Origin: Octopus sinensis
Lineage: Eukaryota
NCBI RefSeq assembly: GCF_006345805.1
Contig: NC_042997.1
Coordinates: forward strand, 162,378,001-162,442,000
Direction of reading: 5' to 3'
Length of the DNA stretch: 64,000 nucleotides
A program made the position numbers and the translations under genes. Positions 3,649-63,290 of the stretch are shown piece by piece (position 1 is the first letter of the stretch; each line of letters opens with the position of its first letter). The notes under the pieces are model-generated. The model made no database searches, had not been told where the DNA came from, and worked only from the letters and a program-made list of their open reading frames with translations.

Positions 3649-3728
<80 letters not shown>

Positions 3729-4124
3729 ATATACGTATATATATATACACATATACATGTTTACATAATATATGTATGCGTGTGTGTGTTTAGATGCGTG
3801 TATATTTGCACGTGTGTGCATAGGATATATACATGCATGTATATATGCACACATAGCTGAGAGATTAAGAAAGCGGCTTTGCAATCTCCAGTCCGTTACA
3901 TGGCATCCGGGGCATGTGTCTTTAACCATCGCTCTCCGAGTCGACCAAAGCCTGGCGTGTGTCAAACTGACTAAACGAAAACTGCGAATGTCTCTGTGAT
4001 GGATTGTACTTATAATTCAAAAGCGTAGTCCTTTCACAAACTGTGTAACGTTGATTTTTCCCGAGGATTATTTTAAGGAAACAAATGTCTGTCGAATACA
4101 CAGTCTTCTCATGAATTTCCCGGA

Positions 4125-5430: not shown

Positions 5431-5544
5431 GATAATGATGATGGTAATGTTGTTGTTGATGATGATGATGATGATGATAATGATGATGATGATGATGAGG
5501 AGGAGGAGGAGGAGGAGGAGGGTGATGATGATGATGACGACGAC

Positions 5545-5597
<53 letters not shown>

Positions 5598-5598
5598 C

Positions 5599-5633
<35 letters not shown>

Positions 5634-5634
5634 C

Positions 5635-5666
<32 letters not shown>

Positions 5667-5790
5667 CGGTGGTGGTGGTGGTGATGCTGGTGATGCTGAC
5701 AGTCGTCATTGCCATCCATTAATCATTAATCCCCTACTAATCATTAATCATTATTATTATCACCATCGTCATCATCATCGCCGACACGAT
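5431..5790. repeat. Compound (GAT)n/(GAG)n/(GGT)n microsatellite
   Basis: Seen directly; source of the poly-D, poly-H and poly-M ORFs. Confidence 0.95.
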
Positions 5791-6249
5791 CACTCAACAT
5801 CTCCACCGTCATAACCGTGCGTACCGCTAACAAATTTCCCGTAAATTTCCCTTCTTGATTCCATTAGTGTCCCCTCTACAAACATAGTCGCCAGTTACGA
5901 AAACTCTTCGAGACCAGCAAGGAAACATTTACGTGGTCGTTCGATCTGCTGAAAATATTTACCAAATCTCCCCCAAATCATACACCGCACCGTTTTAAAA
6001 TTGGCAGGGCACATGAAATAATGTAGCTCTAGAAACATTGAATAAGAGACTGAATGGTCACGGCTGGAATGTCTTTGACCATAATTGGGATTAAACAGTA
6101 ACACCTTGACTGCTCCAATCTCACTTTCTCACTATCTGTCTGTCTGTCTCTGTCTGTCTGTCTGTCTGTATCTCTCTCTCTCTCATTCTTAATCTCCCAA
6201 CAATAATATCCAGGTCTCTGCAAACACGCTGCAATGCGTGATATGCCCC

Positions 6250-7222: not shown

Positions 7223-7653
<431 letters not shown>

Positions 7654-7671
7654 AATAATAATAATAACAAT

Positions 7672-8200
7672 AATGAAATTCTGAAATGCATCAGCACAAA
7701 CAACATCACAGAAACAGATAATTTGATCAAGGCAGCAAGCATTGTTCTAGCAGAAAATGTAGGTGTCGATGTCAAGAAAAAGAAACATAATGGGAGTGAC
7801 AAAAGAAAAGATCCATGGTGGAAAAGAAGAATCCAGGCAGGGTTAGACATGTTCCCGAAGGAAATCTCTGTGTTAGACCGAAAAGAGAAAGTGGCGTTTC
7901 AAAGCGAACAAAAATACAGTACGCTGAAAAGGAAGTATAATATTGAAAGAAAGCGCCTGAAAGTAGTAGTGGAGGAACTGAAACAGCGTCTCGTTGCAAA
8001 GAAAGCAAAGATGGTAAGATACGACCAAAGAATGAAGGGTTACCGCCAGAATAGGTTATTCAGAGTAGATCAGAAGAGATTCTATAAAGAAATAAATGGA
8101 GGGTGTGCAGATGAAAAGTTGATACCAGTTAACAATGAAAGTCAAAGGTTTTGGAGTGACATCTGGAGCAAAGACAAGGAGCGCAAGAAGGACAACAACA
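7672..8200 (+). mobile_element. R4/Dong-like ORF fragment upstream of the RT
   Basis: PWWKRRIQ...LKQRLVAKKAKMVRYDQRMKGYRQNRLFRVDQKRFYKEI...FWSDIW; starts at (TAA)n, ends at (AAG)40. Confidence 0.8.
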
Positions 8201-8202
8201 GC

Positions 8203-8322
8203 AAGAAGAAGAAGAAGAAGAAGAAGAAGAAGAAGAAGAAGAAGAAGAAGAAGAAGAAGAAGAAGAAGAAGAAGAAGAAGAAGAAGAAGAAGAAGAAGAA
8301 GAAGAAGAAGAAGAAGAAGAAG
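8203..8322. repeat. (AAG)40 microsatellite
   Basis: Seen directly. Confidence 0.97.
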
Positions 8323-9330
8323 GAGACTATTAACAATATGCTGAAGTCATTACCCCAAAGCAGACACAAACAGATTATATCTACCCCGGCGAGAGGGATG
8401 TCGCAACCTGACACAAATAGAGAATTACTATGACATTGGATTATACATAAGGAGGCGAGAATATAGAAAATAGAAACAAACTACATTGAAACACTGATTT
8501 CAGTTGACAACACAGCAGAAATGGTCAAGGAGACAAAAAAAATAACAGGAAAGCAGAACCATAAAAAATATACTAAAGAAGAAATGGAAATAAAAATCAT
8601 TCCATGGCCAATACCTTGCAAGGGGTGACATAGAAGTGAACCTAAGTAAAAGTCAACAATAGTTCAAAAGCTCTGGGCTAAGATCAAAAACAGGACTGAT
8701 TATCGTTGCATAATACCAAGCCTGATCACTATCAATTATAAAAGCAAAATAAGCCCTTACACCAAATGCAAAATGTGCAAACTGCACATTGAGAAACGTC
8801 ATCTTTGGATGTCCAGTCCAAGCCAAATAGACATAAGCGAGTAAATAGTTATATACACTAAGCAATGTGCCAACACTACGACATAAGCACTAACGAGAAA
8901 TGGTATAAACATATACCAAACAAGGTACATGACAACAACCAGACCATTGGATATGCCTGTTCAAACGGGCAAAGAAATCAAAAATAATCGCCCAGATATA
9001 ATTAAGGATTATTATTACAATACCAGTAATAACTGGGGCATTGCGTATGACAAAAATGACACATGAACAAAAACGTAGACGCTATAACTGGACCCTCAAA
9101 TCTACACACTATCCCCCCAAAAAACAGTCCTGCTAGAAACAGCCCACATCCTACGCAAGACACTATCAAATAAATAGTACAACCCATAAAAAATAATCCC
9201 CAAACACAAGACCCACTCTATACTGTAAATATATATTAAATAAATAACCCTCACAATATGTTCGCTACAGTCGGATAACAACCTGCATTACACACACAAC
9301 ACAATACTGTCAATAATACAAAAAGACTGC
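8323..9330 (+). mobile_element. R4/Dong-like C-terminal half with 3'UTR
   Basis: HYPKADTNRLYLP, CKMC knuckle, WYKHIP, NNRPDII, QKTVLLETAHILRKTL. Confidence 0.75.
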
Positions 9331-13136: not shown

Positions 13137-13930
13137 CCAGGTCTGATCAAAAGGTATCCGGATTGTTGCCACAGTAACGAAGCTACAGCATGCAGAGTGA
13201 AGCCTCTTTGCACAGATTGACCTTGAACTCTGCTGTGCATGCGCACTAAGTTTTAACGTTTTAGCTCACTTCCGCTGTTTATAGCAGTGCTTGGAAAGAA
13301 GTTGTGTAGCGTGTGATCGTAGCATTGACCATGACAGAGAAAGTTGTCGTGGTGATATCTGCTCAGAGGCCTATGCAAAGTTGCAGAAAGTGTATAGAGA
13401 GACTGTATAAGCCACACACAAGTGTACGAGTGGTTCAATCCTTTCCAAGATGGCCGAAAAAATGTCGATAATGACGAACGTTCTGGGAGACCTGCAACCA
13501 GTAGAACTGAGAAAAACATCGCAGGGGAAATCATCGAATCACTATCAGTGAGTTATCAGAGGATGTGTAGATTAGTTACGGGTCAGTCCATATTCACTGA
13601 AGATTTGGGTATGAGATGCGTGTCTGCCAAGTTTGCACTAAAAGGACATTTCGGTTCAGTTGTACAAGATCTCTTTGATTGTGTCGAGAATAATGAGAAC
13701 ATTTTGAAAACTCTGTGTAGGCCTCTGAGCAGGTATCGCCAAGCTTTTAGCAAAATTTGCTGCAGATTCTCAGCTCAACTTTCTTTGTACACAACGGAAG
13801 TAATTTAGAACGTTACAACTTAGTGTCCATGCACAGCAGAGTTCAAGGTCAGTTGTGCCTAGTGGCTTCACTCTGTGAGCTTTAGCTTCATTACTATAAC
13901 AACAGTCCGGATACTTATTGATCAGACCAG
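13137..13930 (+). mobile_element. Internally deleted mariner with about 130-bp inverted ends
   Basis: Termini CCAGGTCTGATCAAAAGGTATCCGG and CTGGTCTGATCAATAAGTATCCGG (reverse complement); TA flanks; YEWFNPFQDGRKNVDNDERSGRP HTH remnant. Confidence 0.88.
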
Positions 13931-13936
13931 TACGTA

Positions 13937-13981
<45 letters not shown>

Positions 13982-14162
13982 CATGTATTTGTATACATAC
14001 ACATATATATGTATATGTATACATATATGTGTGTATATGTATATATGTATATGTGTGTGAATATAAAGTTAATCCGAACAAGAAAGCACAAAAAAACACA
14101 ACGCGAGGACGTGGAACAAATATAGTATTATTGGACGCTAAGGAAAGAAGGAAAGAAGGAGG

Positions 14163-14197
14163 GCTTAACGTTTCGAGCGGAGCTCTTCGTCGGAAAC
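14163..14197 (-). ncRNA. Minimal hammerhead-like motif, core CCGACGA
   Basis: guuu-CCGACGA-a-gagc-ucc-gcuc-GAAA-cguu-aagc; stem I guuu/aagc pairs. Confidence 0.6.
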
Positions 14198-15040
14198 ATA
14201 GGAGAAGGAAAGATCTAGAGAAGGGAAGACAGAGAGAAAAAAATCGCAGCGGTACACACGCGGTCGTATGTATGTATGTATGTATGTATGTATGTATGTA
14301 TGTATGTATGTATGTATGTATGTATGTATATGTACATGTGTGCGTGTGTGTGTATATATGTGTCCAAGCGTTAGTAGTATATGGAAGTATATGTGAACCA
14401 ACACGTATATGTATGTAGAGGCCGAATCTTAAAGGTCAGCCAAGGACAATCGCATGGGTAACCAACCATGAAATTCAAATCAACAATACAAAGAAATCAA
14501 ATGCCAATTCCTTTAAAACAGCAACCACTTTAACAGTAACAATAACAGAATCACCATCCCACTGCATCTACACATTCAAAGCAGTTTGTAAACGACCCTC
14601 CAGCAACAACACACCCTGATAAGCTCAGTGACTACTACTAAATTCAGGCCACGATGGGATGCTGTTGAAGCCGAGTATTTCGAACTTACGGAGAGAATAT
14701 TTACATATCACCTGAGGAAACACAAACTGATCTCACAATGCAGAGAAACTACGTTGCGTGGAAAGAATGTAGTGATTAAAAAATAAATGTCTAACCGTAC
14801 TCCTTCTTGTTGACTCCAATTTTTTCAGTTATCTATTCACACACGGCAGATGCCCTAAACGCAAACCTGGAAGTACGTATAATACTACACTACTAGATAG
14901 CACAGGGTAGATCTAAAGGTGGAATACGTTCTGTTAAGAACGTATACCACAGCTATCACCTTGATAGATCGCCACGATACCACAGCTATAGCCATGATAG
15001 ATCGTTAGCGACTACACTTTCTTTATTTTCTCTCCTTCTT

Positions 15041-17539: not shown

Positions 17540-17694
17540 CGAGAATATGTATATATTGTGTGTATACATATAGACATACATACATATATACATGTGTAAT
17601 ATAGATATATATGCAGAAAGAGAACGGGTGAGAGAGCGGTGCAAGGAGGGCGAGAAATATATTAAAATATTAAATCGAGTATAATTATATTATG

Positions 17695-17776
<82 letters not shown>

Positions 17777-17961
17777 TTCAGCAAAATATTAAGATTCCAA
17801 TGAATTCAAATGATATGGTACTTAACTTAGATGCACCAGAATTCTTTATGGTATTAGCCATAATAATGTGGGGTGATTGTATTTGCTGCAATATTTGCTG
17901 TGATTGTATTTGCTGCAATATTTGCTGCAATATGTATATACACACGTATATACATATCTCG

Positions 17962-18039
<78 letters not shown>

Positions 18040-18071
18040 TGCATATATATATACATGCATATATATATACA

Positions 18072-18115
<44 letters not shown>

Positions 18116-18144
18116 ATATATATATATGCATGTATATATATGCA

Positions 18145-18186
<42 letters not shown>

Positions 18187-18275
18187 AGAAATATGTATAT
18201 ACGTGTGTATACATACATACCTACATACATACATACATGCATGCATGCATACATACACATACATACATACATACA

Positions 18276-18308
<33 letters not shown>

Positions 18309-18420
18309 GCAATATAGATATATATACAGAAAGAGATCGGGTGAGAGAGCGGGGCAAGGAGGGCGAGATATATATTAAAATACTAAACCGAGTATAATTT
18401 TACAAATATAAGCCCAGTAT
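17040..18420. repeat. (TA)n-rich region with a duplicated unit
   Basis: CAGAAAGAGA.CGGGTGAGAGAGCGG.GCAAGGAGGGCGAGA at about 17612 and 18327. Confidence 0.85.
17230..17267 (-). ncRNA. Minimal hammerhead-like motif, core CUGUUGA
   Basis: ucuuu-CUGUUGA-a-gagc-guag-gcuc-GAAA-cguu-aaaga; stems I and II perfect. Confidence 0.6.
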
Positions 18421-24747: not shown

Positions 24748-24975
24748 ACAGTGCAGCAGAAAGGTTGCCCCGATTTCAAAGGTTAATAATAAAAATAAAA
24801 AAAAAACATGAAGGTACAAGTTAAAATGATGTTCTCCACTCTAGAACATGGTGGGTCCTACCTGAAAATGGCATTTAATGAACTTCATAGAAATACAAAG
24901 TTTTTTCATGCATTTTCATGTGTTTGCTTTTTATCAGCCTTTGAAATCAGAGCAACCTTACTGCCGCACCCTGCA
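24748..24975. mobile_element. Small MITE-like element
   Basis: Inverted arms GCAGAAAGGTTGCCCCGATTTCAAAGG and CCTTTGAAATCAGAGCAACCTTACTGC. Confidence 0.5.
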
Positions 24976-25107
24976 TATATGTATATACGTACATACATAT
25001 ATATACATATATGTATATACATGCATACATACATATATATACATATATGTATATGCATACATACATATATGTATATACATACTTACATGCATATATATAC
25101 ATACTTC

Positions 25108-25141
<34 letters not shown>

Positions 25142-25269
25142 TATATATATATGTGTGTGTGTGTGTGTGTATATATGTATGTATATGTATGTATGTATAT
25201 ATGTATATATGTATGTATGTATATATGTATATATGTATGTATGTATGTATCTATTATGTATGTTTGTAT

Positions 25270-27950
25270 GTATGTGCAAATTTGTAAGTTTTATATATGT
25301 ATTCTCATGTATAATAGAATTACATATCTAGATATGCTCATATATATTTAAATGATAAACGTCTGGAAAGTTTTATAGATTTTTACAGTTCCTGTGATGG
25401 ATTGGATCTGTAGCCATCGAATTAGCCTTCTCCTTTCTGGTTTTGAGAAGCCTAACTTCTCAAGATTGGTATTTAGGCGGTGTGTAACATATCCCTGGTT
25501 CCCAACAATTTCAGGTATAAACCTGAACTTGTTATCTGGATACAGTAACTGCAGATTTCTCAATAATTCAGCATTGGTGTTCCCTTTTTTACTGATCTTC
25601 AGCTTAATGTTAACATCCGCTAGGAAGCTGTTTCCACAACTGTGCAGTTTCTCTTCTCTATCCCAAATCATTATATCAGGACTGTTGTGCTTACATTTTA
25701 TTGAGGTCTTCACTGGTACATTCCTCCAGTATTCCTTTTTATTATGAGTGGCTATGGCTTCTACCATATTATGAGTTTTTATTTCTTTGTCCTCGGGGTT
25801 ATCCTTCCGACGGATTTCATTATCGAGTGTCCTAGCTATAGCGTCATGTCTCATCGGTAGATAATACCATGATGACATTTTCGGATAACTGCTTATGTTG
25901 TGGGAGATATCTTCAGTGTGAACTCCACAAAGTCTGCATCGGTTGTCACATTTTACGGCTTTTCCCGCATCTTATCCCTTTTGTGCATCAGGTACTTGGT
26001 TGATATTTCCTGTTCCTGGATTACAAATGCATACCTTTCAAAGTGGGCGTAATAATCCGGCTATTCGTCCATGATAAACTGTTTTGATGATTGATGTTAC
26101 TATCATCACGGAGCTTTCTACTAACATATCTATGCATAGTCTTCTGCTTATATAGGCTCATCCTTTCATCTGATGATATGTTACGGTAGAGTCGTGCAAT
26201 TTCTTTAGGCATGTATTCTTCGTTATCGGACAAAGAGTGTTGCTCAAGGAGCTGCCTTCCAAGTCTTATGATGTTATCAGCTTCATGTATGCATACTTGG
26301 TCAAGGGATGCACTTCGACGCTTGGTGATTAAAAGATGTTGCCGAAGGGATAAAATGCGACATTCAAAGGCATTTTGGATCAATGTTAAGCTTCTTCCAC
26401 TTTGTTTTCGTTTTAGGTAGAGGCGGTCTATATCACTGTTTATGTGGAAATTATGTGTGCTTGTTAGTATTTTTCGGGTTTTCACATCAACGGCTCAGAT
26501 CTCATCAAGCATCCAATCAAGCAGTTCAAATGTTGGGATGAGTACTGGTGCTGCAAACATATTCTGGGACACTGTTTTATTGAATGCAGAGAGTTATGAG
26601 GTCCAAATTTTCTTTATTCGGCTGTAATATTCTTTAGTGACACGTATTTTGTTACAGGTGCCACTGTAAGATAGATTTTCATTCACCTCTAGATACCTGT
26701 AACATACCTCGTCAGATACAGGGGAAACATTCAAATCATTGACGGAGATGCTACTAGTCTGGTTAATAGATTGCCTCCATTTCACAACCATATTACAACA
26801 TTTATCCTAACCAAACTCCAACCCTACATCCTTCGAGAATGTTGCAAGTAGATCAAGGATCTTTTTCATCTCATGCATATTTTTTGCATAAAGTTTTAAG
26901 CCATCCACAAAGAAACAGGTGTAATTTTTGTATTTCTGTTTCCTTGTGAACCAGTGAGATACCCTTCAGACTTCCTTAACATGAATGACAAGGGGTTACA
27001 GCAAGTATAAACAACATCACAGAGAGGTTGTCTCCTTGGAATATGCCTTTGCGATATTGTATTCTATCAGTGATAATACAGTCACTCTTTGTGTTTAATT
27101 TCGATGAAGTCAGGCCAGCTATGGCTTTGACTATTCTCACTGGAACTTTAGCAAGTAGAAGGTTTCTAACATCCATGAGTGAGGAACAGAGTCAAAGGCT
27201 TTCTTGTAATCTAGCCACATTAAAACTAGGTTCCTCCTATGCTCTCGCACCTCTGACATCACAGTTTTGCTGATTAGCAATTGCTCGGTAAATCCCCAGG
27301 ACTTCCTTCTTCCCAGCTGCTTCTTCTGCTGTGCTAATGTTACTGGTTTCACAATGGTCATGGTGGAAGAGGTTTAAACATGCTGTATATATCTTATACA
27401 TTAAGTTCTGGTACGCAATTGGTCGGTAGTTCTTTGCCATGCGAATGGTTCTGCATTTGGGAATCAATTTTGACTCTGCTAGAACCAGCCAGTGTGGTAG
27501 AATGTTAGTTTCTTGTACCAATATCCAACAATCAAATCTCTTCCAGGTGCTTTTCCATCCTGGAGTTTCTGGATCACAGTTGCAAGAGTTTCACTATCAA
27601 TGTTGTATGTCCTGGATGTAAAGCAGAAGCAATAACTTTTTCGGATTTCTTCCAGCCACAGAGCATCTTGGTTAAATTCTTTCTCTTCACTCCAGATTTT
27701 TCTCCAGGAGGCTGTCTTCTTGTGAAGGAGCTTCCGTGATATTTTTTGTTCCTCCTCTCATGTCTCTGTATGCTGCCGCCTGGTTAAATTTTTTGTTTAT
27801 TGTTCTTCTCTCGGTTATTCTCTTCTGATGTCGGAGTTTTTCACTGACAGCTTTTAGCTCTTGCTTTAGGGTAATCAGTTTGCAAGTGAGTGTCCCCTTT
27901 TTGTTGTATCCAAACATCATTTCTGTCTCCTTCATCACTTTCTGTTAGTG
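25270..27950 (-). mobile_element. R4/Dong-like non-LTR retrotransposon (RT plus REL endonuclease), 5'-truncated and degraded
   Basis: NYRPIAYQNLMYKIYT, WLDYKKAFDSVPHSW, GIFQGDNLS, SDIDRLYLKRKQSGRSL, zinc-knuckle CRLC..H, RHDAIA, HNSPDIMIWD; 3'UTR runs into (CATA)n. Confidence 0.9.
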
Positions 27951-32945: not shown

Positions 32946-33560
32946 CTAGAGTATTTTTTTAGAAAAAATAATGAAAAATAGCTCAGAAGTGCAGAGAAGA
33001 CAGAATTCCTTGCCTTTGTCATATGGTATCGAAATTGAGAGAATCAAACATTCTAAATGAAATTGTTCATTGTGGTCCTTTAAATCCCAAATCAGTTTGC
33101 TGAGACCGGTACTATTACGTTTATTTCTATCCCTAAATGTTGAGTAATGGATAGAAATTCTTTTAGATAACTCTAACGATGTGCTTCCAATGTAAAATCG
33201 TACTTTATTACGAGTACTGATTATACACTGGTATATAGAATTTTTAATCTTAGAGTTACTTGACATAAACTTATTTCTATTGGAATTGACTTCAGATACA
33301 ATAACCTTGTTATTAATATTTCTAGAGGGTTGGATGGTATTAGCTAAATTAATGTTAGTATTAGTAAATGTATTAATATTTAACAATTTGTTACTATGTG
33401 AAGAGATAATTTGCAAGAGATTTTTTGTGTTTGAAAAACCTATCCTAACCTTATGTGAATTGATAATAGAGTAGTATCTAGAATTGTTTGGAAAATTCCT
33501 AGCAATAGCTTTACGAAACAGCAGTGGGAGATTAGATTTAATTTGTCTCCCGTAAGGAAT
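32946..33560 (-). mobile_element. PLE fragment, GIY-YIG endonuclease (Naiad-like)
   Basis: SIYQC...FYIGSTSLELSKRISIHYSTFRDRNKRNSTGLSKLIWDLK...PYDKGKEFCLLCTSE; hammerhead ribozyme downstream. Confidence 0.82.
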
Positions 33561-35820: not shown

Positions 35821-36186
35821 TAACTTCATTTACACCTGATTTCATAGAATAGAAATTTATTTTCAAATATCTGAATTCTTTGAACAATTCCCCAAATAAA
35901 TTTTATTCGCTTCATATTTTGGGCAGAAAAGCGAAAAGGTATTTTTTATGGTTGAAAGCTGTCTGGGTTATTTTGACTAGCAGTTTAAGATGGCTATCTG
36001 GTCTACAGGAGAATTCTCAAAAGAATTCTGCCCTTTCGTTCTGTCTATTTACTATTTACTAGATATATTTTATTTCATGGGCTACTTTTAATAGCATCTG
36101 AGCATTAAAAATATTATATATATATATATATTGGTTTTTTAACCCAATATTTATCTACTTCGAGTTCCTGCGTTAAAAATGAATAT

Positions 36187-36247
<61 letters not shown>

Positions 36248-36258
36248 GAATATATATA

Positions 36259-36305
<47 letters not shown>

Positions 36306-36306
36306 C

Positions 36307-36452
<146 letters not shown>

Positions 36453-36559
36453 TGTATGTATATGTATATATACTCGAAGAAGATAAATATTAGGTTAAAA
36501 ATCTTTTGAATAAAAAAGTTGCAGCCTGCCAGTGGGACTCGAACTTTCATCTTCTATAA

Positions 36560-40737: not shown

Positions 40738-40772
40738 CCTCTTTCTTTTTCAGCCTATAAAACATACCAACA
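40738..40772 (+). promoter_or_regulatory. 5'UTR intron acceptor (AG at 40752-40753) and 19-nt leader of reflectin-L
   Basis: Polypyrimidine tract CCTCTTTCTTTTTCAG, then CCTATAAAACATACCAACA-ATG. Confidence 0.75.
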
Positions 40773-41807
40773 ATGAACCGTTTTATGAACAGATTCCGTC
40801 CCCAATTTAACAGAAAATACAGAGGATTCATGGAACCAATGAACATGATGTCCATGGACTTCCAAGGCAGATACATGGATTCTTATGGAAGAATGGTAGA
40901 TCCCAAACAATATGAATTTTATGGCAAATATTCTGACAATGACAGATACTATGGTAAATCTATGTACAACTATTACGGTTTCTATGATAACGATAGGTTC
41001 CATAGATATGGTAATTTTATGGACTTCCCAGAAAGGTTTATGGATATGTCCGGATATCAGATGGATATGAATGGAAAATGGATGGATACACAAGGTCAAA
41101 ACTCCAACCCCTACTGGAATATGTTCAGCTCTTCAAGACAAGGCTACAATCCAGGTTACTCTTATGGTCGTAACTGGTTCTTTCCTGAGAGATTCATGGA
41201 CATGTCTCACTACCAGATGGATATGGGTGGCCGATACATGGACAAAAGTGGACGTCACTGCAACCCGTATTACAGCCACTACAGGCGTTATATGTCTCAT
41301 CCACAAATGAATTTCTCTCAAATGCACTACCCTGAGAGATTCATGGATATGTCTAGCTACCAGATGGACATAGGTGGTCGTTATATGGATAAGTGGGGCT
41401 GCCATATTAATCCATTCAGCACTTATTACTTCGGTAAGCAATCATATTATCCTCATAACTTTTGGAGCCAGAGAAAATACATGGACATGTCTTTCAACCA
41501 GATGGATATGCAATTTAATTCGATGGACATGAATAGCCGTAATTGTGACCAACTCCACTATTTCAGAAATTTCGATATGTGGAACAACCAGATGGATTTT
41601 GACGGACACTGGATGAATATGAACAACCAATCTTACCAACCTCCCAGTTTTATCAGGAGTCAAGTTTATTACAACCCTTACCACTTTTACACTTGGATGA
41701 GTAGATATTACAGCCAACCTGAGAAATTTTATGATACAACCAACTATCAAGTGGAATTCGGAGGAAAATGGCCGTCACAAGAATATGAATGTATAACACA
41801 AGAATAA
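40773..41807 (+). CDS. reflectin: Reflectin, 344 aa, uninterrupted CDS (here 'reflectin-L')
   Basis: ORF starts MNRFMNR and carries the reflectin N-terminal motif MEPMNMMSMDFQGRYMDSYGRMVDP. Three canonical PERFMDMSxYQMDxxGxxMD repeats follow, then three degenerate ones. Rich in Met/Tyr/Asp/Arg/Asn, with no Ala and one Leu. Start context CAACAATG; stop TAA 41805-41807; AATAAA at 41853 and 41926. Confidence 0.97.
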   Translation: MNRFMNRFRPQFNRKYRGFMEPMNMMSMDFQGRYMDSYGRMVDPKQYEFYGKYSDNDRYYGKSMYNYYGFYDNDRFHRYGNFMDFPERFMDMSGYQMDMNGKWMDTQGQNSNPYWNMFSSSRQGYNPGYSYGRNWFFPERFMDMSHYQMDMGGRYMDKSGRHCNPYYSHYRRYMSHPQMNFSQMHYPERFMDMSSYQMDIGGRYMDKWGCHINPFSTYYFGKQSYYPHNFWSQRKYMDMSFNQMDMQFNSMDMNSRNCDQLHYFRNFDMWNNQMDFDGHWMNMNNQSYQPPSFIRSQVYYNPYHFYTWMSRYYSQPEKFYDTTNYQVEFGGKWPSQEYECITQE

Positions 41808-41852: not shown

Positions 41853-41858
41853 AATAAA
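41853..41858 (+). terminator. Candidate polyadenylation signal, reflectin-L
   Basis: AATAAA 46 nt after the stop; alternative at 41926-41931. Confidence 0.5.
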
Positions 41859-52860: not shown

Positions 52861-53459
52861 GTAGGAGGAGGTTTCATCGAAGCAAAATTTATATATTAGT
52901 TTGCTGATACCTACAGTTGCGGAAATGACAGAGTATGAGCCAGAGAGAGCTGCAGTGGTGCGATCTGACGTGAACCTTCCAATAAAAGAGACAAGATACA
53001 GGTTGAGAACCACGAGGAGTCGTTTAGCCTAGAGTTTCACATCCCGGACAAGGTCGAAATGATTTGCAGATGTTAAGTAAAACGAAACGAAACTGATTTC
53101 ACTAAATTCCTCAATAGTGGGTGCTCACAAGTGAGAGTTATATGTGAGAAGGTCTAGAAGTCATCTAGATTTACATCAGTATTGGTGGTAATAAGGACGG
53201 AAGAGATTCATGGTGTTGGATAAAGCGGTTGCCAATAATTCTTATCATCATCTTTTGAGGTGTTGGAGATAGTTGACGAGATTGAAATGGCTGAGCGCCT
53301 TGAGAATAGAACACACTATAATGTGTTTTTAAAGAGCGGAGAGAGAAATAGAGAGGGAAAGAAAGAAAGAAGAAAGAAAGAAAGAGAGAGAGAGAGAGGA
53401 GAGAGAGAGAGAAAGACAGACGGGCAGACAGAAACAGAAAGAAACAGAGAGAAAGATTG

Positions 53460-56100
53460 AAGAGTTTGCTGAGGATGTGGACGAGAAGTTCCACGCTACT
53501 CCCTATTCCTCCCCTTCATCGAGCCCACCCTCGCCCGCACTTCCCGCCCCTCATCCGTGTCACCATCCGCTCGACACGCTCTCCCTCTTCTACTCCCTTG
53601 ACCACCAACTCTCCTAACCTTACCTCCTCCTCTCCTCTCTCTGCCCTCCACCCTTCACCCAACCCATTTTCCGCTTCCTTCTTAATTTCAACCAACTCCA
53701 CAATTTCCTCACACACACAAAAAACAAAAACTCCACCTCAACCCTTCACACCCTCTCCCTCCCACCCACCCTCCAACACGCTCCTCCCCTCCACCCTCCA
53801 CCCTCCACACACCCACACGTCCCACTCCCGGACATTCTCACCCTTATCCTATCCCTTCCAAACCATTCCAACCCTCCTCCACACCTCTGCATCCCCTCTT
53901 CCCGACCCCACTCACCCAAACACTCTGCTCCCACGCACTGTGGTCACCATACCACCCAATCTCCCCCTGTACGCTGCCGAGTGTTCACTCCTAAGTAGGG
54001 GTCTTCGCTTCACGCCTCTCACGCCCCACTGCAACGAATTTGAGACCCGCACCGACGTCAGCCAGTTCCTGCGCCGCATCAAACCATGCTCGTTTTTCTA
54101 CACGTCTACACAGTGTCATGACAATCGGGATTGCTTCTCGGAGCTGGGGCGCTGCCCATCCAACTGGACGCCGCCTCCAAGCCAATTCAGTAGCCTAGAC
54201 TTGTTCGTGCACGACTGCAATGCGCTGTTCGACCGATTCACTTTCAAAAATGATCCCTCCGGGCTAACCCCACCCATGCTGAATCAATCTCTTCGTGACC
54301 TCCGTCGCCGCGACGACATCGTCATCAAGCTGACAAAGGTGGAGCGGTGGTGGCGTGGCACGCGGACCTATACAGAGAAGAAGCGCTCAGCCAACTTCGA
54401 AATCCCCTCTTCTATCGTCTCCCTCCCTTCGACCCCACCTCCTCCGACCAACAGCGTGTTCCTCCACCATCCATGACCTCATCTCGTCTTCTGCTCTCCC
54501 CCCACTGCCACCAACCACATCGCCCGAACACCCCGTATCTCCATCATCTATTTCCTTCCCAAAATACATAAACCCAACAACCCTGGCCGTCCCATTGTTT
54601 CTGCCTGTAATTGCCCCACAGAACTCATTTCCAAATACCTTGACCGCATCCGGTCCCCTTTAGTTACTATCCTCCCATCCCACATACACACGACACTAAT
54701 CATGCCCTTCGCCTTTTCAGTTCCTTGTCCTTCCCTTCCGGCCCCTCACACCTCTTCTCCTTGGACACAAATTCCTATACACGGTGATGCCCCACAAAGA
54801 CGGTCTCTTAGCCCTCCAATACTTCCTCGACCGTTGCCCTGACTCCACACCCAGCACCTCCACCCTTCTTAGTCTGGCAGAGCTCATCCTCACCCTCAAC
54901 TGCTTTACATTCGCCGGGGATGGCTACCAACATTAGTCTGGGATCGCGATGGGAATGAGCCCCAATTTCGCCAACCTATTTGTTGGTTACATTGAGGCAC
55001 AATCATTCTCCCAATTCTCTGGGCCGACCCCAGAACTATACGGTCGCTACATAGTCGACTGTATAGGTGCGAGCTCCCTCTTCCGGGAACAACTCTGTCA
55101 CTTCATCTCTTTCCTCTCTACTTTCCACTCCTTTCTCCAATTTACTTCTACCATCTCTAACACTTCGGTTAACATCCTTGATATTTCTCTTACCATTGAT
55201 CTTCCCTCCGACTCTCTCACCACTTCCGCCTTTTTCGAACCCAGATCCTCACCTTACCTCAACTTCTTCTCCTCCCATCCCTTCCACACCAAACGGGCCA
55301 TCCCTTACTCCCAGTTCCTCCGCCTCTGACGCTTGTGAAGCCGGGACCAGGATTTCGAGACCCAGTCCAGTATCTTGCCCGCCTGTTCATGCATCAAGGA
55401 TATCTTCAACCCTTGTTCAAACCGTCCTTGCCTGCGCTCGTCGAATCGATCGCACCACTGCCCTCTCTCCTTCCCCACACCAATCTCCAAACCGACCCTC
55501 TTTCTCCTCTTTTTCCATCCCTCCACCCTACCCCTTCGTCGAAGGATCCTAAGGGCCTTCCGTCGTCTCCAGCTCGATTCCAACACCCACTCCATTTTCC
55601 CCAACCTACCCTTGTCCTCCTTTAAACGCTCCCGGAACCTTCGCGATCTACTGGTCCGTAGTACCTTCTCCTCTTCCTCCCAGCCCCACCCAGATCCTTC
55701 CCGTGCTCGAGATCCCGTTGCCACACCTGCCCCTTCATTACTAACACTACCTCCATCACTGGTTCCAACCAGCACACTCTTTACATCACAAATTCCTTCT
55801 CTTGCACCTCTTCTAGCCTCATATACTGTATTAGATGGAACCTCTGAGGTAAACTATATATAGGTCAGACGGGCCATCGGCTGGCCGATCGGTTCACCAA
55901 ACATCTAAGGCATATTCGGCTACGTTCGAACACCCCTGTCGCCCGTCACTTCCGCTTGGCCAACCACTTCCCCTCTAACACCACGATTCCACACACTCGC
56001 GACTCCGCCTAGATCAGCGTTATATTTTTAATCTACGAACAACTATCCCCCTCGGACTAAACACAACTCCCACCTCCTAATGACTGTCTCTACAACCTCC
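53460..56100 (+). mobile_element. Penelope-like retroelement (Neptune-like), frameshifted RT plus GIY-YIG
   Basis: Fragments LSRGLRFTP, LRDLRRRDDIVIK (before KPADKG), PKIHKPNNPGRPIVSAC, MGMSPNFANLFVGYIE, YGRYIVDC (YIDD), HPFHTKRAIPYSQFLRL, FKRSRNLRDLLVRS, and LYIGQTGHRLADRFTKHL near 55855. Confidence 0.9.
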
Positions 56101-56219
56101 TGCAACAAAGCAACTTTATTTCATTGTTTGTTTTTTATTGCGCCATTTTATATTGTATTAACTTCTTCTTTATCCTCTATCAACCTTTTTTGTTATAATT
56201 TAATATATTTTATCTTATT

Positions 56220-56940
56220 TCTATATACACACATATACACACACACGTACAAACACACGCACCCGTGCACACACATGAAATCACATACAACACACATACA
56301 TGCATATCCACACACATACATCCACACACACACGCACATAAATACGCACACACGCGCATATACGCGCGCGCACACACACACGCATACATAAACACACATA
56401 CACATACATATGCACACGCACGCACATACATACACACACATACCTCCCACACACACTAACACAGACACGCACACAATTACACACACATGGACATAAGCAC
56501 ACACACACATACACGCACACACGCACGTAAGCGCATGCACACAAGCACATACAGGAACGCACATATACCCCCCACACCACCCCATGCACACATGCATACA
56601 GAAACTCACATACACATATATATATACACACATCCATACACATGCACACACACGCACATTCAATATATGCATACACACACATACACACATATGCGCACAC
56701 ACACGCATGCGCACACATACACACACATACATAGACATAGACGCACACACACACGCATACACATACCTATACATACGCACACACACATACACACGCACAC
56801 ACACATGCACATACACAAACATGTACACACATATACACTCACATGAACACACGCACACACAGACACAGGCACACACTGCTCATAAAGTACATGCACACAC
56901 AACATATACATACACGCGCACATACATACTTCAAACTACC
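56220..56940. repeat. Degenerate (CA)/(CATA)-rich tract inside the PLE 3' region
   Basis: Seen directly. Confidence 0.9.
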
Positions 56941-57269
56941 AGTTAAACACCTTTCTACTGACCATTCTCCTACGCACATGTGAAAGGAGACACACAAAAG
57001 ACAGCCACTCCTACCTAAAAGTTCTACTGTAAATTCTTCCTACGACATTAAGCGACACAAAGTCCACTCATTCACACACACATAAACAGCTAAAACCACG
57101 CGCACACACACATACGCACGTACACGTGCTATTATTACACACACAAACACACACACAGACCTGCGCGCATGCACATACCCACACATACACGCACATATCT
57201 CCTCTTGTACTTTTCTGTCTTAAAAAGAATTTTCTCTGCACCCATTCCCTTCCAGTCATTTCAAAATGT

Positions 57270-57460
57270 AACTGCATGTGTATCGTTGGCGATTTTCTTC
57301 CTCCATCTTCCCTTCCTTTGGACTTTTCTCTATTTCCGAAGAAGAGCTTGGCTCGAAACGTTAAATCCTCTTTCCTTCCTTTCCTGAGCGTCTGATAATA
57401 CAGTACTTGCACCACGTACTCGAGTTATTATTTTTCTTTGTTCCTCATCAACACCGGTTC
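57270..57460 (+). mobile_element. PLE pseudo-LTR segment carrying a hammerhead motif
   Basis: Shares ...CTTTCCTGAGCGTC..ATAATAC... with 11950-12110 and 14060-14250. Confidence 0.55.
57332..57366 (+). ncRNA. Minimal hammerhead-like motif, core CCGAAGA, downstream of the PLE body
   Basis: auuu-CCGAAGA-a-gagc-uug-gcuc-GAAA-cguu-aaau; same strand as, and about 1.3 kb 3' of, the PLE at 53460-56100. Confidence 0.62.
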
Positions 57461-57746
57461 TCAAGCGGTCGTAGGGAGACAAACACACACACACACATAT
57501 ATCATTATATACGACGGGCTTCTTTCAGTTTCCGTCATCCCACTCACAAAGCGTTGATCCTTCCGAGGCTATAGTACAAGACACTTGTCCAAGGTGCCAG
57601 GCAGTAGGATTGAACCCTGAACCTTGTGGTTGGGAAGCAAGCTTCTTACCACACAGCCACGCCTGTGCCTATATGTGTGTGTGTGTATGTGTATGTCTGT
57701 CTGTTAGCATGTATGCATGTATGTATCTGTGTGTTTATATATACAC

Positions 57747-57804
<58 letters not shown>

Positions 57805-58031
57805 ATATATACAAACAAGTATATAAATATGCAGTGTGGAGGCCCTTTAAAGCGACCACTATGGGACGTATTATTGCAGATTATGATTATTTAATAACAT
57901 TACCTGTTGGTATGATAAGCAGTTTCAGGAGTTACAATTGCTACAAGATATTTGGATTTTTCATCTCTCGAAGGGAGGATAATTTCAATAAATCAAATAT
58001 TTATTAGTGAAGAGAGAGAGAGAAAGAAAAA

Positions 58032-62089: not shown

Positions 62090-63187
62090 TTAGAAGTAGT
62101 ATTCGTTCCAATGGTCAAAGTGGGTCATATGACGACCATTCATATCCATCCACTGACCTCCAAAATCCATCTGATAATTGGACATATCAAACCATCTATG
62201 GCCTCCATAGAAGTAAGGACTGTAGTTGAAGAAGTGGTACCTGCTGTGGTAATTATAGGGAGACATTGAATGGAATTCATAATCCATATCATACCATCTC
62301 TCTGGGTTGTTGTAGTATCTTTGGCCCCAGCTGTAACTATGATAAGGGTAGTAGTGGTGATGTCTGCCGTGATAGCTGTAGAAGGGTGTGCAATGACGGC
62401 TATACATATCCATCCAGCGGCCATCAAAATCCATTTGATAGTTTGTCATATCAAAGTATCTCTCTGGGTAGTTGTAATACCTTTGGCCCCAGCTGTAGTT
62501 ATAATAAGGGTAGTTATGGTAGTACCTGCCATAGTTGGTGTAGAAAGGAGTTGAAAAACGGCCATACATATCCATCCAGCGGCCATACATGTCCATCTGA
62601 TAGCCGGACATATCCATGAATCTCTCGGGATAGTGCATATAGTAGAAATTCATATATGGATAATACATATAACGCCTGTAATAGTTGTAATAAGGGTTGC
62701 AGTGACGTCCATATCTGTCCATGTATCGGCCATACACGTCCATTTGATAGTGGGACATGTCCATGAATCTCTCAGGATAGAACCAGTTACGACCATAGCG
62801 GTAGCCAGGGTAGTAGCCATGTTTTGAAGAGTTGAACATATACCAGTAGGGGCTGGAGTGGTGTCCGTGCATGTCCATCCATCTTCCATACATATCCATC
62901 TGATAACTGGACATATCCATAAACCTCTCAGGGAAGTCCATGAAATAACCGTATCTATGGAACCTATCGTTATCATAGAAACCGTAATAGTTGTACATAG
63001 ATTTACCATAGTATCTATCATTATCAGAATATCTACCATAGAATTCATAGAATCTGGGATCTACCATTCTTCCATAAGAATCCATGTATCTGCCTTGAAA
63101 ATCCATGGACATCACGCTCATTGGTTCCATGATTCCTCTGTATTTTCTGGCGAAATGATGACGGAATTTGTTCATGAGACGGTTCAT
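62090..63187 (-). CDS. reflectin: Reflectin, 365 aa, uninterrupted CDS (here 'reflectin-R')
   Basis: From Met34 of the 62090-63286 ORF: MNRLMNK..., N-terminal motif MEPMSVMSMDFQGRYMDSYGRMVDP, four PER[F/Y][M/F]DM motifs and a split fifth. The first 33 codons of the track ORF are a translated polypyrimidine tract (FLFFSF), so the true start is placed at 63187, matching the MNR start of the paralog. AATAAA on - at 61938-61933. Confidence 0.96.
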   Translation of the reverse strand: MNRLMNKFRHHFARKYRGIMEPMSVMSMDFQGRYMDSYGRMVDPRFYEFYGRYSDNDRYYGKSMYNYYGFYDNDRFHRYGYFMDFPERFMDMSSYQMDMYGRWMDMHGHHSSPYWYMFNSSKHGYYPGYRYGRNWFYPERFMDMSHYQMDVYGRYMDRYGRHCNPYYNYYRRYMYYPYMNFYYMHYPERFMDMSGYQMDMYGRWMDMYGRFSTPFYTNYGRYYHNYPYYNYSWGQRYYNYPERYFDMTNYQMDFDGRWMDMYSRHCTPFYSYHGRHHHYYPYHSYSWGQRYYNNPERWYDMDYEFHSMSPYNYHSRYHFFNYSPYFYGGHRWFDMSNYQMDFGGQWMDMNGRHMTHFDHWNEYYF

Positions 63188-63290
63188 TGTTGAAATACAG
63201 GTTTGACTGAAATAAAAATAAAACATTGCATAATAATGATTAAAAATGAAGGAAAAGAAAAGGAAAGAAAACAAATTTATAAACAAGAGT
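63188..63290 (-). promoter_or_regulatory. 5'UTR intron acceptor (AG at 63208-63207) and 19-nt leader of reflectin-R
   Basis: On -: long U/C tract ...TTTTCTTTCCTTTTC...TTTTATTTTTATTTCAG, then TCAAACCTGTATTTCAACA-ATG. Same 19-nt spacing as the paralog. Confidence 0.75.

What the first reader, a model, noticed from the sequence alone, without database searches (positions are those of the whole stretch)
40773..41390. One-way tyrosine loss in reflectin-L across 206 gap-free aligned residues
Seen: aa 1-206 of the two proteins align without indels. At 14 positions reflectin-R has Tyr where reflectin-L has N/S/H/Q/G/F (e.g. YYNYYRRYMYYPYMNFYY vs YYSHYRRYMSHPQMNFSQ); only one position goes the other way. 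Manual whole-protein counts: Tyr 43/344 vs 74/365, His about 11 vs about 24. Several Arg positions are Lys in L. Established: Tyr/Arg/His-rich linkers and their charge neutralisation (phosphorylation in vivo, pH in vitro) drive reflectin condensation. Inference: the paralogs have diverged in refractive index, assembly threshold or tunability.
Basis: partly seen in the sequence, partly recalled or inferred. Interest (0 to 1): 0.72.

Follow-up and report, generated by a model that had tools for sequence, protein, structure and literature searches.

The report
Tyrosine-depleted octopus reflectin paralog
Two neighbouring genes for reflectin, the octopus light-reflecting skin protein, differ because one copy really did replace about half the tyrosines in its central region with small polar residues while the rest stayed conserved, which probably makes it a less "sticky" partner protein, though nobody has tested that.

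Summary
The window is Octopus sinensis chromosome DNA. It holds two convergent reflectin genes: L (40773-41807 +, 344 aa) and R (63187-62090 -, 365 aa). Residues 1-206 align without gaps (164/206 identical). At 14 sites R has Tyr and L does not, with 1 site the other way. Tyr is 43 vs 74 and His 11 vs 24.

With Argonauta hians as outgroup (synonymous distances support this), 11 of the 14 sites are Tyr losses on the L branch, none are on R, and 3 are ambiguous.

- The loss is regional: 0/13 Tyr lost in aa 1-80 and 11/24 in aa 81-206.
- It removes 6 of the 8 YGR tripeptides.
- It comes with four Arg-to-Lys changes.
- It continues in parallel in O. sinensis and O. bimaculoides.

The lost Tyr codons changed at about the neutral rate, so positive selection is not shown. 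However, L overall is constrained (dN/dS 0.2-0.3) and intact in four octopod sources. The replacements are also biased towards N/S/G/Q/H, with no Asp or Cys.

Part of the His difference is a gain in R. The predicted refractive-increment difference is only about 3%. The larger predicted effects are on sticker valence and titratable charge. Functional divergence is plausible but untested.

The parts
40773..41807 (+). Reflectin-L coding sequence (344 aa plus stop), a single uninterrupted ORF
   Evidence: The identical protein is encoded in O. sinensis GCA_006345805.1 and O. vulgaris GCA_951406725.2. A 94% identical ortholog occurs in O. bimaculoides (P0001).
40773..41012 (+). L aa 1-80: head, N-terminal reflectin motif (MEPMNMMSMDFQGRYMDSYGRMVDP) and first linker. 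All 13 ancestral Tyr are kept.
   Evidence: 0/13 Tyr lost here; the probability under neutrality is about 5e-4.
41013..41390 (+). L aa 81-206: the Tyr-depleted central block (reflectin motifs 1-3 and their linkers). It has 11 polarised Tyr losses plus 3 ambiguous ones, and Arg-to-Lys changes at 102 and 158.
   Evidence: Tyr is 11.1% here, against 21.4% in both R and Argonauta.
41268..41330 (+). L aa 166-186, the linker between motifs 2 and 3. This is the hot spot: YYSHYRRYMSHPQMNFSQMHY against YYNYYRRYMYYPYMNFYYMHY in R (5 Tyr vs 11).
41415..41804 (+). L aa 215-344: C-terminal part made of degenerate reflectin motifs. It ends in PEKFYDTTNYQVEFGGKWPSQEYECITQE, a motif with its Met and Asp replaced. 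It is shared with the Argonauta protein and absent from R.
   Evidence: No remnant lies downstream of the R stop codon.
40738..40753 (+). Polypyrimidine tract plus CAG (CCTCTTTCTTTTTCAG), ending 19 nt before the L start codon. Probable 3' splice site of a 5'-UTR intron.
   Evidence: The same arrangement is seen upstream of R, of the Argonauta gene and of the P0004 gene. This is inferred from sequence; there is no transcript evidence.
41853..41858 (+). AATAAA polyadenylation signal 46 nt after the L stop codon, at the same offset in O. bimaculoides
62090..63187 (-). Reflectin-R coding sequence (365 aa plus stop): Tyr 20.3%, His 6.6%, nine YGR tripeptides, six canonical motif matches
62570..63187 (-). 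R aa 1-206, the block that aligns without gaps to L aa 1-206. No Tyr change on this branch; Q to H at 11, 107, 109.
63207..63224 (-). Polypyrimidine tract plus CAG, 19 nt upstream of the R start codon (probable splice acceptor)

Best explanation
L and R are paralogous reflectin genes lying tail to tail, 20 kb apart, in Octopus sinensis. Their first 206 codons share a Tyr-rich common ancestor that is younger than the split from Argonauta.

After that point the L lineage changed in four ways:
- It replaced about half of the tyrosines in its central block (aa 81-206) with N, S, G, Q, H or F. This destroyed six of the eight YGR tripeptides.
- It changed four Arg to Lys and two His to Asn/Gln.
- It carries a 111-residue internal deletion of Tyr-rich repeats relative to the Argonauta-like form.
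- It kept an old degenerate C-terminal tail.

R kept every Tyr, gained three His and lacks the tail.

Shown: the polarity, the regional pattern, the ongoing purifying selection on the rest of L, and the non-random choice of replacement residues.

Inferred: Tyr and Arg are the main stickers of reflectin linkers, and His sets the pH-dependent charge. L should therefore be a lower-valence, less cationic reflectin that still carries intact reflectin motifs. It would condense less readily or form more fluid assemblies than R. If the two are co-expressed, L could co-assemble with R and soften or tune its condensates. This would resemble the way squid reflectins with fewer aromatic residues fluidise the canonical ones.

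The confidence given (0.55) is for the whole statement. The evolutionary part alone (a real, polarised, Tyr-specific loss in a gene that is still constrained) I put at about 0.85. The functional part I put at about 0.4.
For: Polarity:
- Synonymous distances over codons 1-206 are L-R 0.47, L-Argonauta 0.82 and R-Argonauta 0.70. Argonauta is therefore an outgroup for this block.
- L and R share 18 residues that differ from Argonauta, e.g. K62, H77, W135, H146.
- Parsimony gives 11 Tyr losses on L, 0 on R and no unambiguous Tyr gain on R.

Tyr is specifically affected:
- 11/37 Tyr sites changed on L against 12/169 other sites (Fisher p=4e-4).
- The bias holds within linkers (8/28 vs 5/66, p=0.018) and within motifs (3/9 vs 7/94, p=0.04).

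L is not a decaying gene:
- O. sinensis vs O. bimaculoides L has dN/dS 0.21 for codons 1-206 and 0.30 overall.
- The ORF is intact in O. sinensis, O. vulgaris, O. bimaculoides and a fourth octopod.
- All 13 Tyr of aa 1-80 are kept and the canonical motifs are retained.
- A real reflectin pseudogene in O. bimaculoides shows stop codons and damaged Met/Asp cores, which L does not.

Replacement spectrum: observed N3 S2 H2 G2 Q1 F1 with no Cys or Asp. The neutral expectation is Cys+Asp 29% and Gly+Gln 4.5%.

Parallel continuation: 8 of the 21 differences between the two L orthologs involve Tyr. O. sinensis lost 126, 169, 242 and 248; O. bimaculoides lost 79 and 125.

YGR counts: R 9, Argonauta 9, L 2, O. 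bimaculoides L 1.

Biophysics from the literature:
- Tyr/Arg-rich linkers cause dynamic arrest, and less aromatic non-canonical reflectins fluidise canonical ones (10.64898/2026.08.27.747642).
- The in vivo phospho-sites of squid A1 are linker tyrosines, His content sets the reversibility of assembly, and YGR/GRY are phase-separation motifs (10.1101/456442).

Predicted charge at pH 6 is +15 for R and +7 for L.
Against: - The rate of Tyr replacement in aa 81-206 (11 of 24) equals the neutral expectation (8.7-10.1 of 24 for d=0.235-0.295). Simple loss of constraint on these residues is enough to explain it; positive selection is not needed.
- The C-terminal part of L has dN/dS 0.62, but this rests on only 3 synonymous differences.
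- There is no expression evidence for L or R. The Logan contigs that carry octopod homologs are genomic, not transcripts.
- The overall branch dN/dS values differ only modestly (about 0.26 for L and 0.18 for R, derived).
- Counts are small and come from a single outgroup protein.
- Argonauta argo has an inverted divergent reflectin in its own cluster (PMC9635652). The L/R split could therefore be older, with the N-terminal block homogenised later by gene conversion. This leaves the polarity of the block intact but changes its dating.
- No assembly measurement exists for any octopus reflectin.
Confidence: 0.55

Rival explanations
1. Neutral erosion. After duplication L became partly redundant. 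Selection that kept an extreme Tyr content in the central block lapsed. Ordinary mutation pressure then moved a 21%-Tyr region towards a normal composition. On this view the asymmetry has no functional meaning.
For: - Tyr codons of aa 81-206 changed at about the neutral rate.
- One-way change is what any strongly biased composition shows once constraint is lifted.
- The L branch has 23 amino-acid changes against 10 on R, with similar synonymous counts.
- The tail dN/dS is 0.62.
- There is no expression evidence.
- A decayed reflectin copy exists in the O. bimaculoides cluster, so copies do die there.
Against: - Non-Tyr sites in the same block stay constrained (12/169 changed).
- L orthologs have dN/dS 0.21-0.30.
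- The ORF has stayed intact across a synonymous distance of about 0.3 and in four octopod sources.
- The replacements avoid Cys and Asp and over-use Gly and Gln compared with the neutral spectrum.
- The splice-acceptor-like site and the polyadenylation signal are conserved.
- Arg-to-Lys changes fall within the same YGR motifs.
Confidence: 0.3
2. Reverse polarity. The ancestor was Tyr-poor like L, and R (with the Argonauta protein) gained tyrosines.
For: - Three of the 14 sites are ambiguous: Argonauta has His at 116 and Phe at 159 and 178. R may have gained Tyr at these.
- R did gain His at 11, 107 and 109.
- Many decapod reflectins have 11-15% Tyr, and at the motif positions 100, 152 and 201 they mostly carry Q or H.
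Against: - At 11 sites R and Argonauta share Tyr, often with the same TAT codon.
- Synonymous distances place Argonauta outside L+R for this block.
- O. bimaculoides L and the third octopod still have Tyr at 126 and 169, where O. sinensis L has lost it. The loss is therefore observed in progress.
- Stepwise codons fit loss: TAT to AAT (O. bimaculoides) to GGT (O. sinensis) at site 152.
Confidence: 0.04
3. Mutational or recombinational artefact. The pattern would come from a strand or composition bias at the L locus, or from a gene-conversion patch copied from another Tyr-poor reflectin, rather than from independent substitutions.
For: - Gene conversion does occur in reflectin clusters. It is reported for Argonauta argo (PMC9635652).
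- The O. bimaculoides pseudogene is a mosaic: L-like residues at 100-112 sit within an otherwise R-like sequence (dS 0.22 to R, 0.43-0.47 to L).
Against: - The Tyr codons changed by many different routes: T>A, T>C and T>G at position 1, and A>C, A>T and A>G at position 2.
- GC at all three codon positions is nearly the same in L and R.
- Synonymous changes are balanced, 13 vs 10.
- The only other octopod paralog recovered (P0004) matches L at just one of the 14 sites.
- The losses are spread over 120 codons and continue separately in two species.
Confidence: 0.05

Closest known systems
Canonical reflectins of decapod cephalopods (Euprymna scolopes reflectins; Doryteuthis opalescens reflectin A1 and A2; Sepia officinalis reflectin 1)
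   Same: - An N-terminal conserved motif (MEPMxxMSMDFQGRYMDSxGRMVDP).
- Repeated [M/F]D-X5-MD-X5-MD motifs separated by linkers.
- Composition dominated by Y, M, R, N and D, with about 2% aliphatic residues.
- Homologs are restricted to cephalopods.

R resembles A1 in having about 20% Tyr and a high His content. L resembles A2 in its lower Tyr (12.5% vs 12.6%) and low His.
   Different: - L and R arose within octopods, independently of the squid A1/A2 split.
- L has lost the YGR tripeptides inside its motifs.
- L has 3.2% Lys, where reflectins usually have almost none.
- L ends in a motif with its Met and Asp replaced.
Non-canonical reflectins B and C of loliginid squid
   Same: Their linkers are less enriched in aromatic residues. 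They form more fluid condensates and raise the mobility of canonical reflectins in mixed condensates (10.64898/2026.08.27.747642). This is the role proposed here for L.
   Different: - B and C lack the repeated motif architecture. L keeps the N-terminal motif and at least four canonical motifs.
- The origin is independent.
- No assembly data exist for L.
Argonauta hians LOC115215290-like protein (P0002, 447 aa)
   Same: Its first ~330 residues match R (78% identity). Its last ~120 residues match the L tail, including NYQVEFGGKWPSQEYE. It looks like the undivided form from which both Octopus genes can be derived.
   Different: - It is Tyr-rich throughout the central block (21.4%, the same as R).
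- It contains both the repeats that L lacks and the tail that R lacks.
Sticker-and-spacer grammar of FUS-family prion-like and RGG domains (general knowledge of phase separation, not tested here)
   Same: Tyr and Arg act as stickers. Tyr to Ser/Gly/Gln/Asn and Arg to Lys are the classic changes that weaken phase separation. These are the changes seen on the L branch.
   Different: The proteins are unrelated. The analogy is one of physical chemistry only.

Membership tests
Reflectin family | Conserved N-terminal reflectin motif (MEPMSRM(T/S)MDFQGRYMDSQGRMVDP) | tested here: met
   L aa 20-44 is MEPMNMMSMDFQGRYMDSYGRMVDP and R is MEPMSVMSMDFQGRYMDSYGRMVDP. Both align to squid and cuttlefish reflectins.
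Reflectin family | Repeated motifs [M/F]D-X5-MD-X5-MD-X3/4 | tested here: met
   The regular-expression scan gives 5 matches in L (starts 83, 90, 142, 191, 237) and 6 in R (83, 90, 142, 191, 245, 333).
Reflectin family | Unusual composition: rich in Tyr, Met, Arg, Asn and Asp, nearly free of Ala/Ile/Leu/Val and Lys | tested here: met
   - R: Y+M+R+N+D 54.5%, A+I+L+V 1.6%, Lys 1.1%.
- L: 47.4%, 2.3%, Lys 3.2%.
L meets the feature in a weakened form.
Reflectin family | Sequence homology to named reflectins, with homologs found only in cephalopods | tested here: met
   Hits include Sepia officinalis reflectin 1, Doryteuthis opalescens reflectin-like A2, Loligo forbesii methionine-rich repeat protein 1 and Acanthosepion pharaonis reflectin 14, with E-values from 1e-36 to 1e-77. 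Every named hit is from a cephalopod. Only 16 representatives were found among 1.84 billion proteins, but that library carries no names. Pfam has no model for the family.
Reflectin family | Expression in reflective tissues and formation of high-index platelets or granules | not testable with these tools
   No transcript or protein data were reachable. The Logan contigs are genomic.
Low-valence 'fluidiser' reflectins (functional class of squid B/C) | Linkers poorer in aromatic residues than those of the canonical partner | tested here: met
   For aa 81-206, aromatic residues are 20.6% in L and 31.0% in R. The motif 2-3 linker has 5 Tyr vs 11.
Low-valence 'fluidiser' reflectins (functional class of squid B/C) | Lack of the repeated motif architecture | tested here: not met
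   L keeps the N-terminal motif and at least four canonical motifs. It may work like B/C but does not belong to their type.
Low-valence 'fluidiser' reflectins (functional class of squid B/C) | Co-expression with canonical reflectins and an increase in their mobility in mixed condensates | not testable with these tools
   This needs expression data and FRAP experiments.
Pseudogene / decaying duplicate | Stop codons or frameshifts, and dN/dS near 1 across the gene | tested here: not met
   - The ORF is intact in four sources.
- dN/dS is 0.21 for codons 1-206 and 0.30 overall.
- For contrast, the O. bimaculoides pseudogene in L011 has several stops.

The most novel reading that the evidence does not exclude
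Octopods independently evolved a two-component reflectin system by splitting one long ancestral reflectin (Argonauta-like, 447 aa) into two complementary genes:
- R, a high-valence scaffold rich in Tyr, His and YGR.
- L, a partner that keeps the assembly motifs but has had its linker stickers and YGR tripeptides stripped out, and that retains an old Met-free terminal motif.

On this reading the L:R ratio would set the material state (fluid or arrested) and the charge threshold of reflectin condensates in octopus skin. This would be a convergent counterpart of the canonical/non-canonical mixing recently described in loliginid squid.
Probability: 0.3. Interest if true: 0.6.

Novelty: new variant of a known kind. 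Interest (0 to 1): 0.45.

Why it matters
Reflectins are the model for proteins that set a tunable refractive index in living cells, and they are widely copied in materials work. Almost all mechanistic knowledge comes from squid; a 2026 preprint says octopus reflectins are "not currently well-classified".

This pair is a natural mutagenesis experiment. The same 206-residue scaffold exists in two forms. One has 11-14 tyrosines, six YGR motifs and four arginines removed, while the reflectin motifs are left intact. Comparing the two proteins, and the reciprocal Tyr swaps, would test directly how much linker tyrosines contribute to three things: the condensation threshold, dynamic arrest and refractive increment.

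It would also show whether mixing high-valence and low-valence reflectins is a general cephalopod strategy or a squid speciality. If L turns out to be unexpressed or biophysically equivalent to R, the finding reduces to an ordinary case of relaxed constraint after duplication.

Tried and rejected
- Pfam scan of L and R found no family, because Pfam has no reflectin model.
- I looked for the O. bimaculoides ortholog of R, to measure constraint on R over the same time span as L. It is not in the protein collection, and the 10-kb flank around O. bimaculoides L does not reach it. What turned up instead was a reflectin pseudogene about 101 kb upstream.
- I looked for a remnant of the L/Argonauta tail downstream of the R stop codon. 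There is none.
- I compared 10 kb upstream and 5 kb downstream of L, R and the Argonauta gene for shared promoter or UTR blocks. Only dispersed repeats matched.
- I tried to use the Logan contigs as expression evidence. They retain the intron-like acceptor sequence and run collinear with the genome, so they are genomic.
- Literature searches for SRR11869391, LOC115215290 and LOC106875838 found nothing.
- Albertin 2015 (the id tried, PMC4795812) and Zhao 2011 (PMC3149238) are not held.
- Two 'reflectin' hits in papers mentioning O. sinensis were only the word 'reflecting'.
- The representative search of 1.84 billion proteins returned only 16 hits and no further L-type sequence.
- Positive selection on the Tyr sites was considered and not adopted, because the replacement rate is not above the neutral expectation.
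- A composition or mutation-bias explanation was rejected.
Full report
**What is there**

The window is Octopus sinensis chromosome CM016859.1, about 162.378-162.442 Mb. The 344-aa protein of the finding is encoded identically in O. sinensis GCA_006345805.1 and O. vulgaris GCA_951406725.2, with 0 nucleotide differences in the coding sequence. The 365-aa partner is encoded at the matching O. sinensis position.

The window holds exactly two reflectin genes:
- L at 40773-41807 (+).
- R at 63187-62090 (-). They are convergent, with their stop codons 20.3 kb apart.

There is no further copy within 10 kb beyond R. Both are uninterrupted ORFs. The 398-aa ORF listed for R starts at an upstream TTG. 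The real start is the ATG at 63187, which gives MNRLMNKF..., the same head as L and other reflectins.

In L, R, the Argonauta homolog and a fourth octopod reflectin, a polypyrimidine tract plus CAG sits 18-19 nt before the ATG. I read this as a conserved 5'-UTR intron acceptor. That is inference from sequence; no transcripts were available.

**Check of the observation**

Every number in the finding was reproduced:
- Residues 1-206 align without gaps, 164/206 identical.
- Fourteen sites have R=Tyr and L=N/S/H/Q/G/F, and one site goes the other way (204).
- Tyr is 43/344 vs 74/365, His 11 vs 24, Lys 11 vs 4 and Arg 25 vs 35.
- Four positions have Lys in L and Arg in R; two go the other way.

A 14:1 split has a two-sided binomial p of 0.001.

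**Relatives**

Protein searches returned:
- A 94% identical L ortholog in O. bimaculoides (P0001, an 'uncharacterized protein').
- A partial L ortholog at about 81% identity from an unidentified octopod (P0003).
- A 447-aa Argonauta hians protein (P0002).
- A second octopod reflectin type (P0004).
- Named squid and cuttlefish reflectins.

Pfam has no reflectin model. The family's defining features (N-terminal motif, repeated [M/F]D-X5-MD-X5-MD motifs, extreme composition, homologs only in cephalopods) are met by both proteins. L meets the composition criterion in a weakened form.

**Architecture**

The Argonauta protein matches R over its first ~330 residues (78% identity). Its last ~120 residues match the L C-terminus, including NYQVEFGGKWPSQEYE.
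- Relative to this form, L has a 111-residue internal deletion (Argonauta residues 216-326, a Tyr-rich repeat region) and keeps the tail.
- R keeps the repeats and ends about 85 residues early. No tail remnant lies downstream of its stop codon.
- The last unit of the tail, PEKFYDTTNYQVEFGGKW, reads as a reflectin motif (PERFxDMSNYQMDFxGRW) whose Met and Asp have been replaced. It is conserved between Octopus and Argonauta.

The two Octopus genes therefore look like complementary derivatives of one longer ancestor.

**Polarity**

Over codons 1-206 the synonymous distances are L-R 0.47, L-Argonauta 0.82, R-Argonauta 0.70 and O. sinensis L-O. bimaculoides L 0.12. L and R also share 18 residues that differ from Argonauta. 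For this block Argonauta is therefore an outgroup. This holds whether the duplication is younger than the Argonauta split or the block was homogenised later by gene conversion, which is reported for Argonauta argo reflectins (PMC9635652).

Parsimony gives:
- 23 amino-acid changes on the L branch and 10 on R (p=0.035), with balanced synonymous changes (13 vs 10).
- Eleven L-branch changes are Tyr losses: 81, 100, 126, 137, 152, 169, 175, 176, 182, 183, 201.
- The R branch has no Tyr change.

L also changed Arg to Lys at 45, 52, 102 and 158, and His to Asn/Gln at 110 and 123. R changed Gln to His at 11, 107 and 109. Part of the His difference is therefore a gain in R.

**Is it more than general divergence?**

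Tyr sites were hit 5-6 times more often than other sites on the L branch:
- Overall: 11/37 vs 12/169, Fisher p=4e-4.
- Within linkers: 8/28 vs 5/66, p=0.018.
- Within motifs: 3/9 vs 7/94, p=0.04.

The loss is regional. None of the 13 Tyr in aa 1-80 changed, against 11 of the 24 in aa 81-206. The linker between motifs 2 and 3 went from 11 Tyr to 5.

Of the eight YGR tripeptides in R aa 1-215 (seven shared with Argonauta), L keeps two and O. bimaculoides L keeps one. Some were hit on both the Tyr and the Arg, for example YGR to NGK at 100-102.

The process continues in parallel. Eight of the 21 differences between the two L orthologs involve Tyr. O. sinensis lost 126, 169, 242 and 248, and O. 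bimaculoides lost 79 and 125.

Several codons took two or three steps:
- 152: TAT to AAT (O. bimaculoides) to GGT (O. sinensis).
- 183: TAT to CAA.
- 201: TAT to GGT.

No single mutation type explains the changes. GC content at each codon position is nearly the same in L and R.

**Selection or relaxation?**

This is the key caveat. A block with 21% Tyr will lose Tyr one way as soon as constraint lapses.

Evidence that fits plain relaxation:
- A simulation of 24 TAY codons at the estimated L-branch neutral distance (0.235-0.295) predicts 8.7-10.1 replacements. The observed number is 11.
- These codons have therefore evolved at about the neutral rate, and positive selection is not shown.

Evidence that L is not a decaying gene:
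- dN/dS between the two L orthologs is 0.21 for codons 1-206 and 0.30 overall. The tail value of 0.62 rests on only 3 synonymous changes.
- The ORF is intact in four sources.
- The N-terminal Tyr and all motif cores are kept.
- The polyadenylation signal and acceptor-like site are conserved.
- A genuine reflectin pseudogene about 101 kb upstream of L in O. bimaculoides shows what decay looks like in this family: stop codons and damaged Met/Asp cores.
- The replacement residues are not those expected neutrally. Cys+Asp should be about 29% and are absent (P about 0.02). Gly+Gln should be about 4.5% and are 3 of 11 (P about 0.015).

The best description is a class-specific release, or weak directional removal, of central-block tyrosines. 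Selection still limits what replaces them to small polar uncharged residues.

**Likely consequences (inferred)**

Reflectin work on squid proteins shows the following:
- Linkers rich in Tyr and Arg act as multivalent stickers that cause dynamic arrest.
- Non-canonical reflectins with less aromatic linkers are more fluid, and they mobilise canonical reflectins in mixed condensates (10.64898/2026.08.27.747642).
- The in vivo phospho-sites of A1 are linker tyrosines.
- His content decides whether assemblies reverse on acidification.
- YGR and GRY are conserved phase-separation motifs (10.1101/456442).

Measured against this, L compares with R as follows:

| Property | L | R |
|---|---|---|
| Tyr+Arg count | 68 | 109 |
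| YGR tripeptides | 2 | 9 |
| His count | 11 | 24 |
| Predicted charge at pH 6 | +7 | +15 |

L should therefore condense less readily or form more fluid assemblies. It should respond less to pH or charge titration, and it offers fewer Tyr phospho-acceptors. Because it keeps the motifs, it could still co-assemble with R.

The refractive effect is small. Composition-based dn/dc is 0.2079 for L and 0.2143 for R. The per-residue increments were recalled from Zhao, Brown and Schuck 2011; the Phe and Tyr values were confirmed in PMC4047532.

In Tyr and His content, R resembles squid A1 and L resembles squid A2. The origin is independent.

**Comparison with what is known, and novelty**

Both genes belong to the reflectin family. 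R is a canonical member. L is a divergent member whose proposed role resembles that of squid B/C. It is not of their type, because it keeps the repeated motifs.

I found no paper that describes this paralog asymmetry. One recent preprint notes that octopus reflectins are poorly classified and unusually variable (10.64898/2026.04.14.718489). I rate it a new variant of a known kind and of moderate interest. The evolutionary pattern is clean and now polarised. The functional claim is plausible, specific and easy to test, but untested, and neutral erosion remains a serious rival.

Noticed in passing
window 40738-40753 (+) and 63207-63224 (-); L004:9960-10000; L008:380-413: Four octopod reflectin genes (L, R, the Argonauta hians gene and the P0004-type gene) all have a polypyrimidine tract plus CAG 18-19 nt before the start codon. 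This suggests a conserved 5'-UTR intron in genes usually described as single-exon.
   Followed up: partly
L011:2974-4600 (O. bimaculoides CM046601.1, about 152.675 Mb, roughly 101 kb upstream of the L ortholog): A reflectin pseudogene with several in-frame stops and degraded motifs. Its first 100 codons are a mosaic: L-like residues at 45 and 100-112 and R-like residues elsewhere. dS is 0.22 to R and 0.43-0.47 to L, which points to gene conversion or recombination among cluster members.
   Followed up: partly
window 41733-41804 (+): The terminal unit of L (DTTNYQVEFGGKWPSQEYECITQE) is a reflectin motif with every Met and Asp replaced. It is conserved with Argonauta hians and so is older than the L/R divergence. 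Its function is unknown.
   Followed up: partly
window 62570-63187 (-): R is not static. It gained His by Q-to-H changes at residues 11, 107 and 109, and it has a more canonical last motif (WFDMSNYQMDFGGQWMDMNGRH) than the aligned Argonauta segment.
   Followed up: partly
window 41226-41228 (L codon 152) and the Lys codons 45, 52, 102, 158: Codon 152 went from AAT (O. bimaculoides) to GGT (O. sinensis), which is two A-to-G changes. The Arg-to-Lys replacements create codons that A-to-I editing could read back as Arg. Whether RNA editing acts on L is unknown and could not be tested here.
   Followed up: no
window 32949-33416 (-): This ORF has a weak GIY-YIG nuclease match (PF01541, E=0.003, below Pfam's cutoff). 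It is probably a remnant of a Penelope-like retroelement.
   Followed up: partly
window 53457-58000: A GC-rich stretch (0.42-0.53) with strongly negative GC skew (-0.35 to -0.43). It contains overlapping Pro/Ser/Thr-rich ORFs on both strands and then a Cys/Val-type microsatellite ORF. No Pfam match. It is likely repeat or retroelement sequence.
   Followed up: partly
window 3507-3965, 13918-14418, 17692-18378, 24878-25351, 36114-36509, 56193-56876; 5344-5814; 7549-8433: Abundant TA/CA-type microsatellites give spurious YIYIYI and CVCVCV ORFs. There is also a poly-Asp low-complexity ORF and an ORF ending in a long poly-Lys run (a marginal S6PP Pfam hit, probably chance).
   Followed up: no
P0013, P0014, P0017 (1103-1270 aa): Long proteins in the representative library contain reflectin-like stretches of about 140 residues. 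They may be the 'reflectin/tbc1 domain family' models mentioned in the argonaut genome paper.
   Followed up: no
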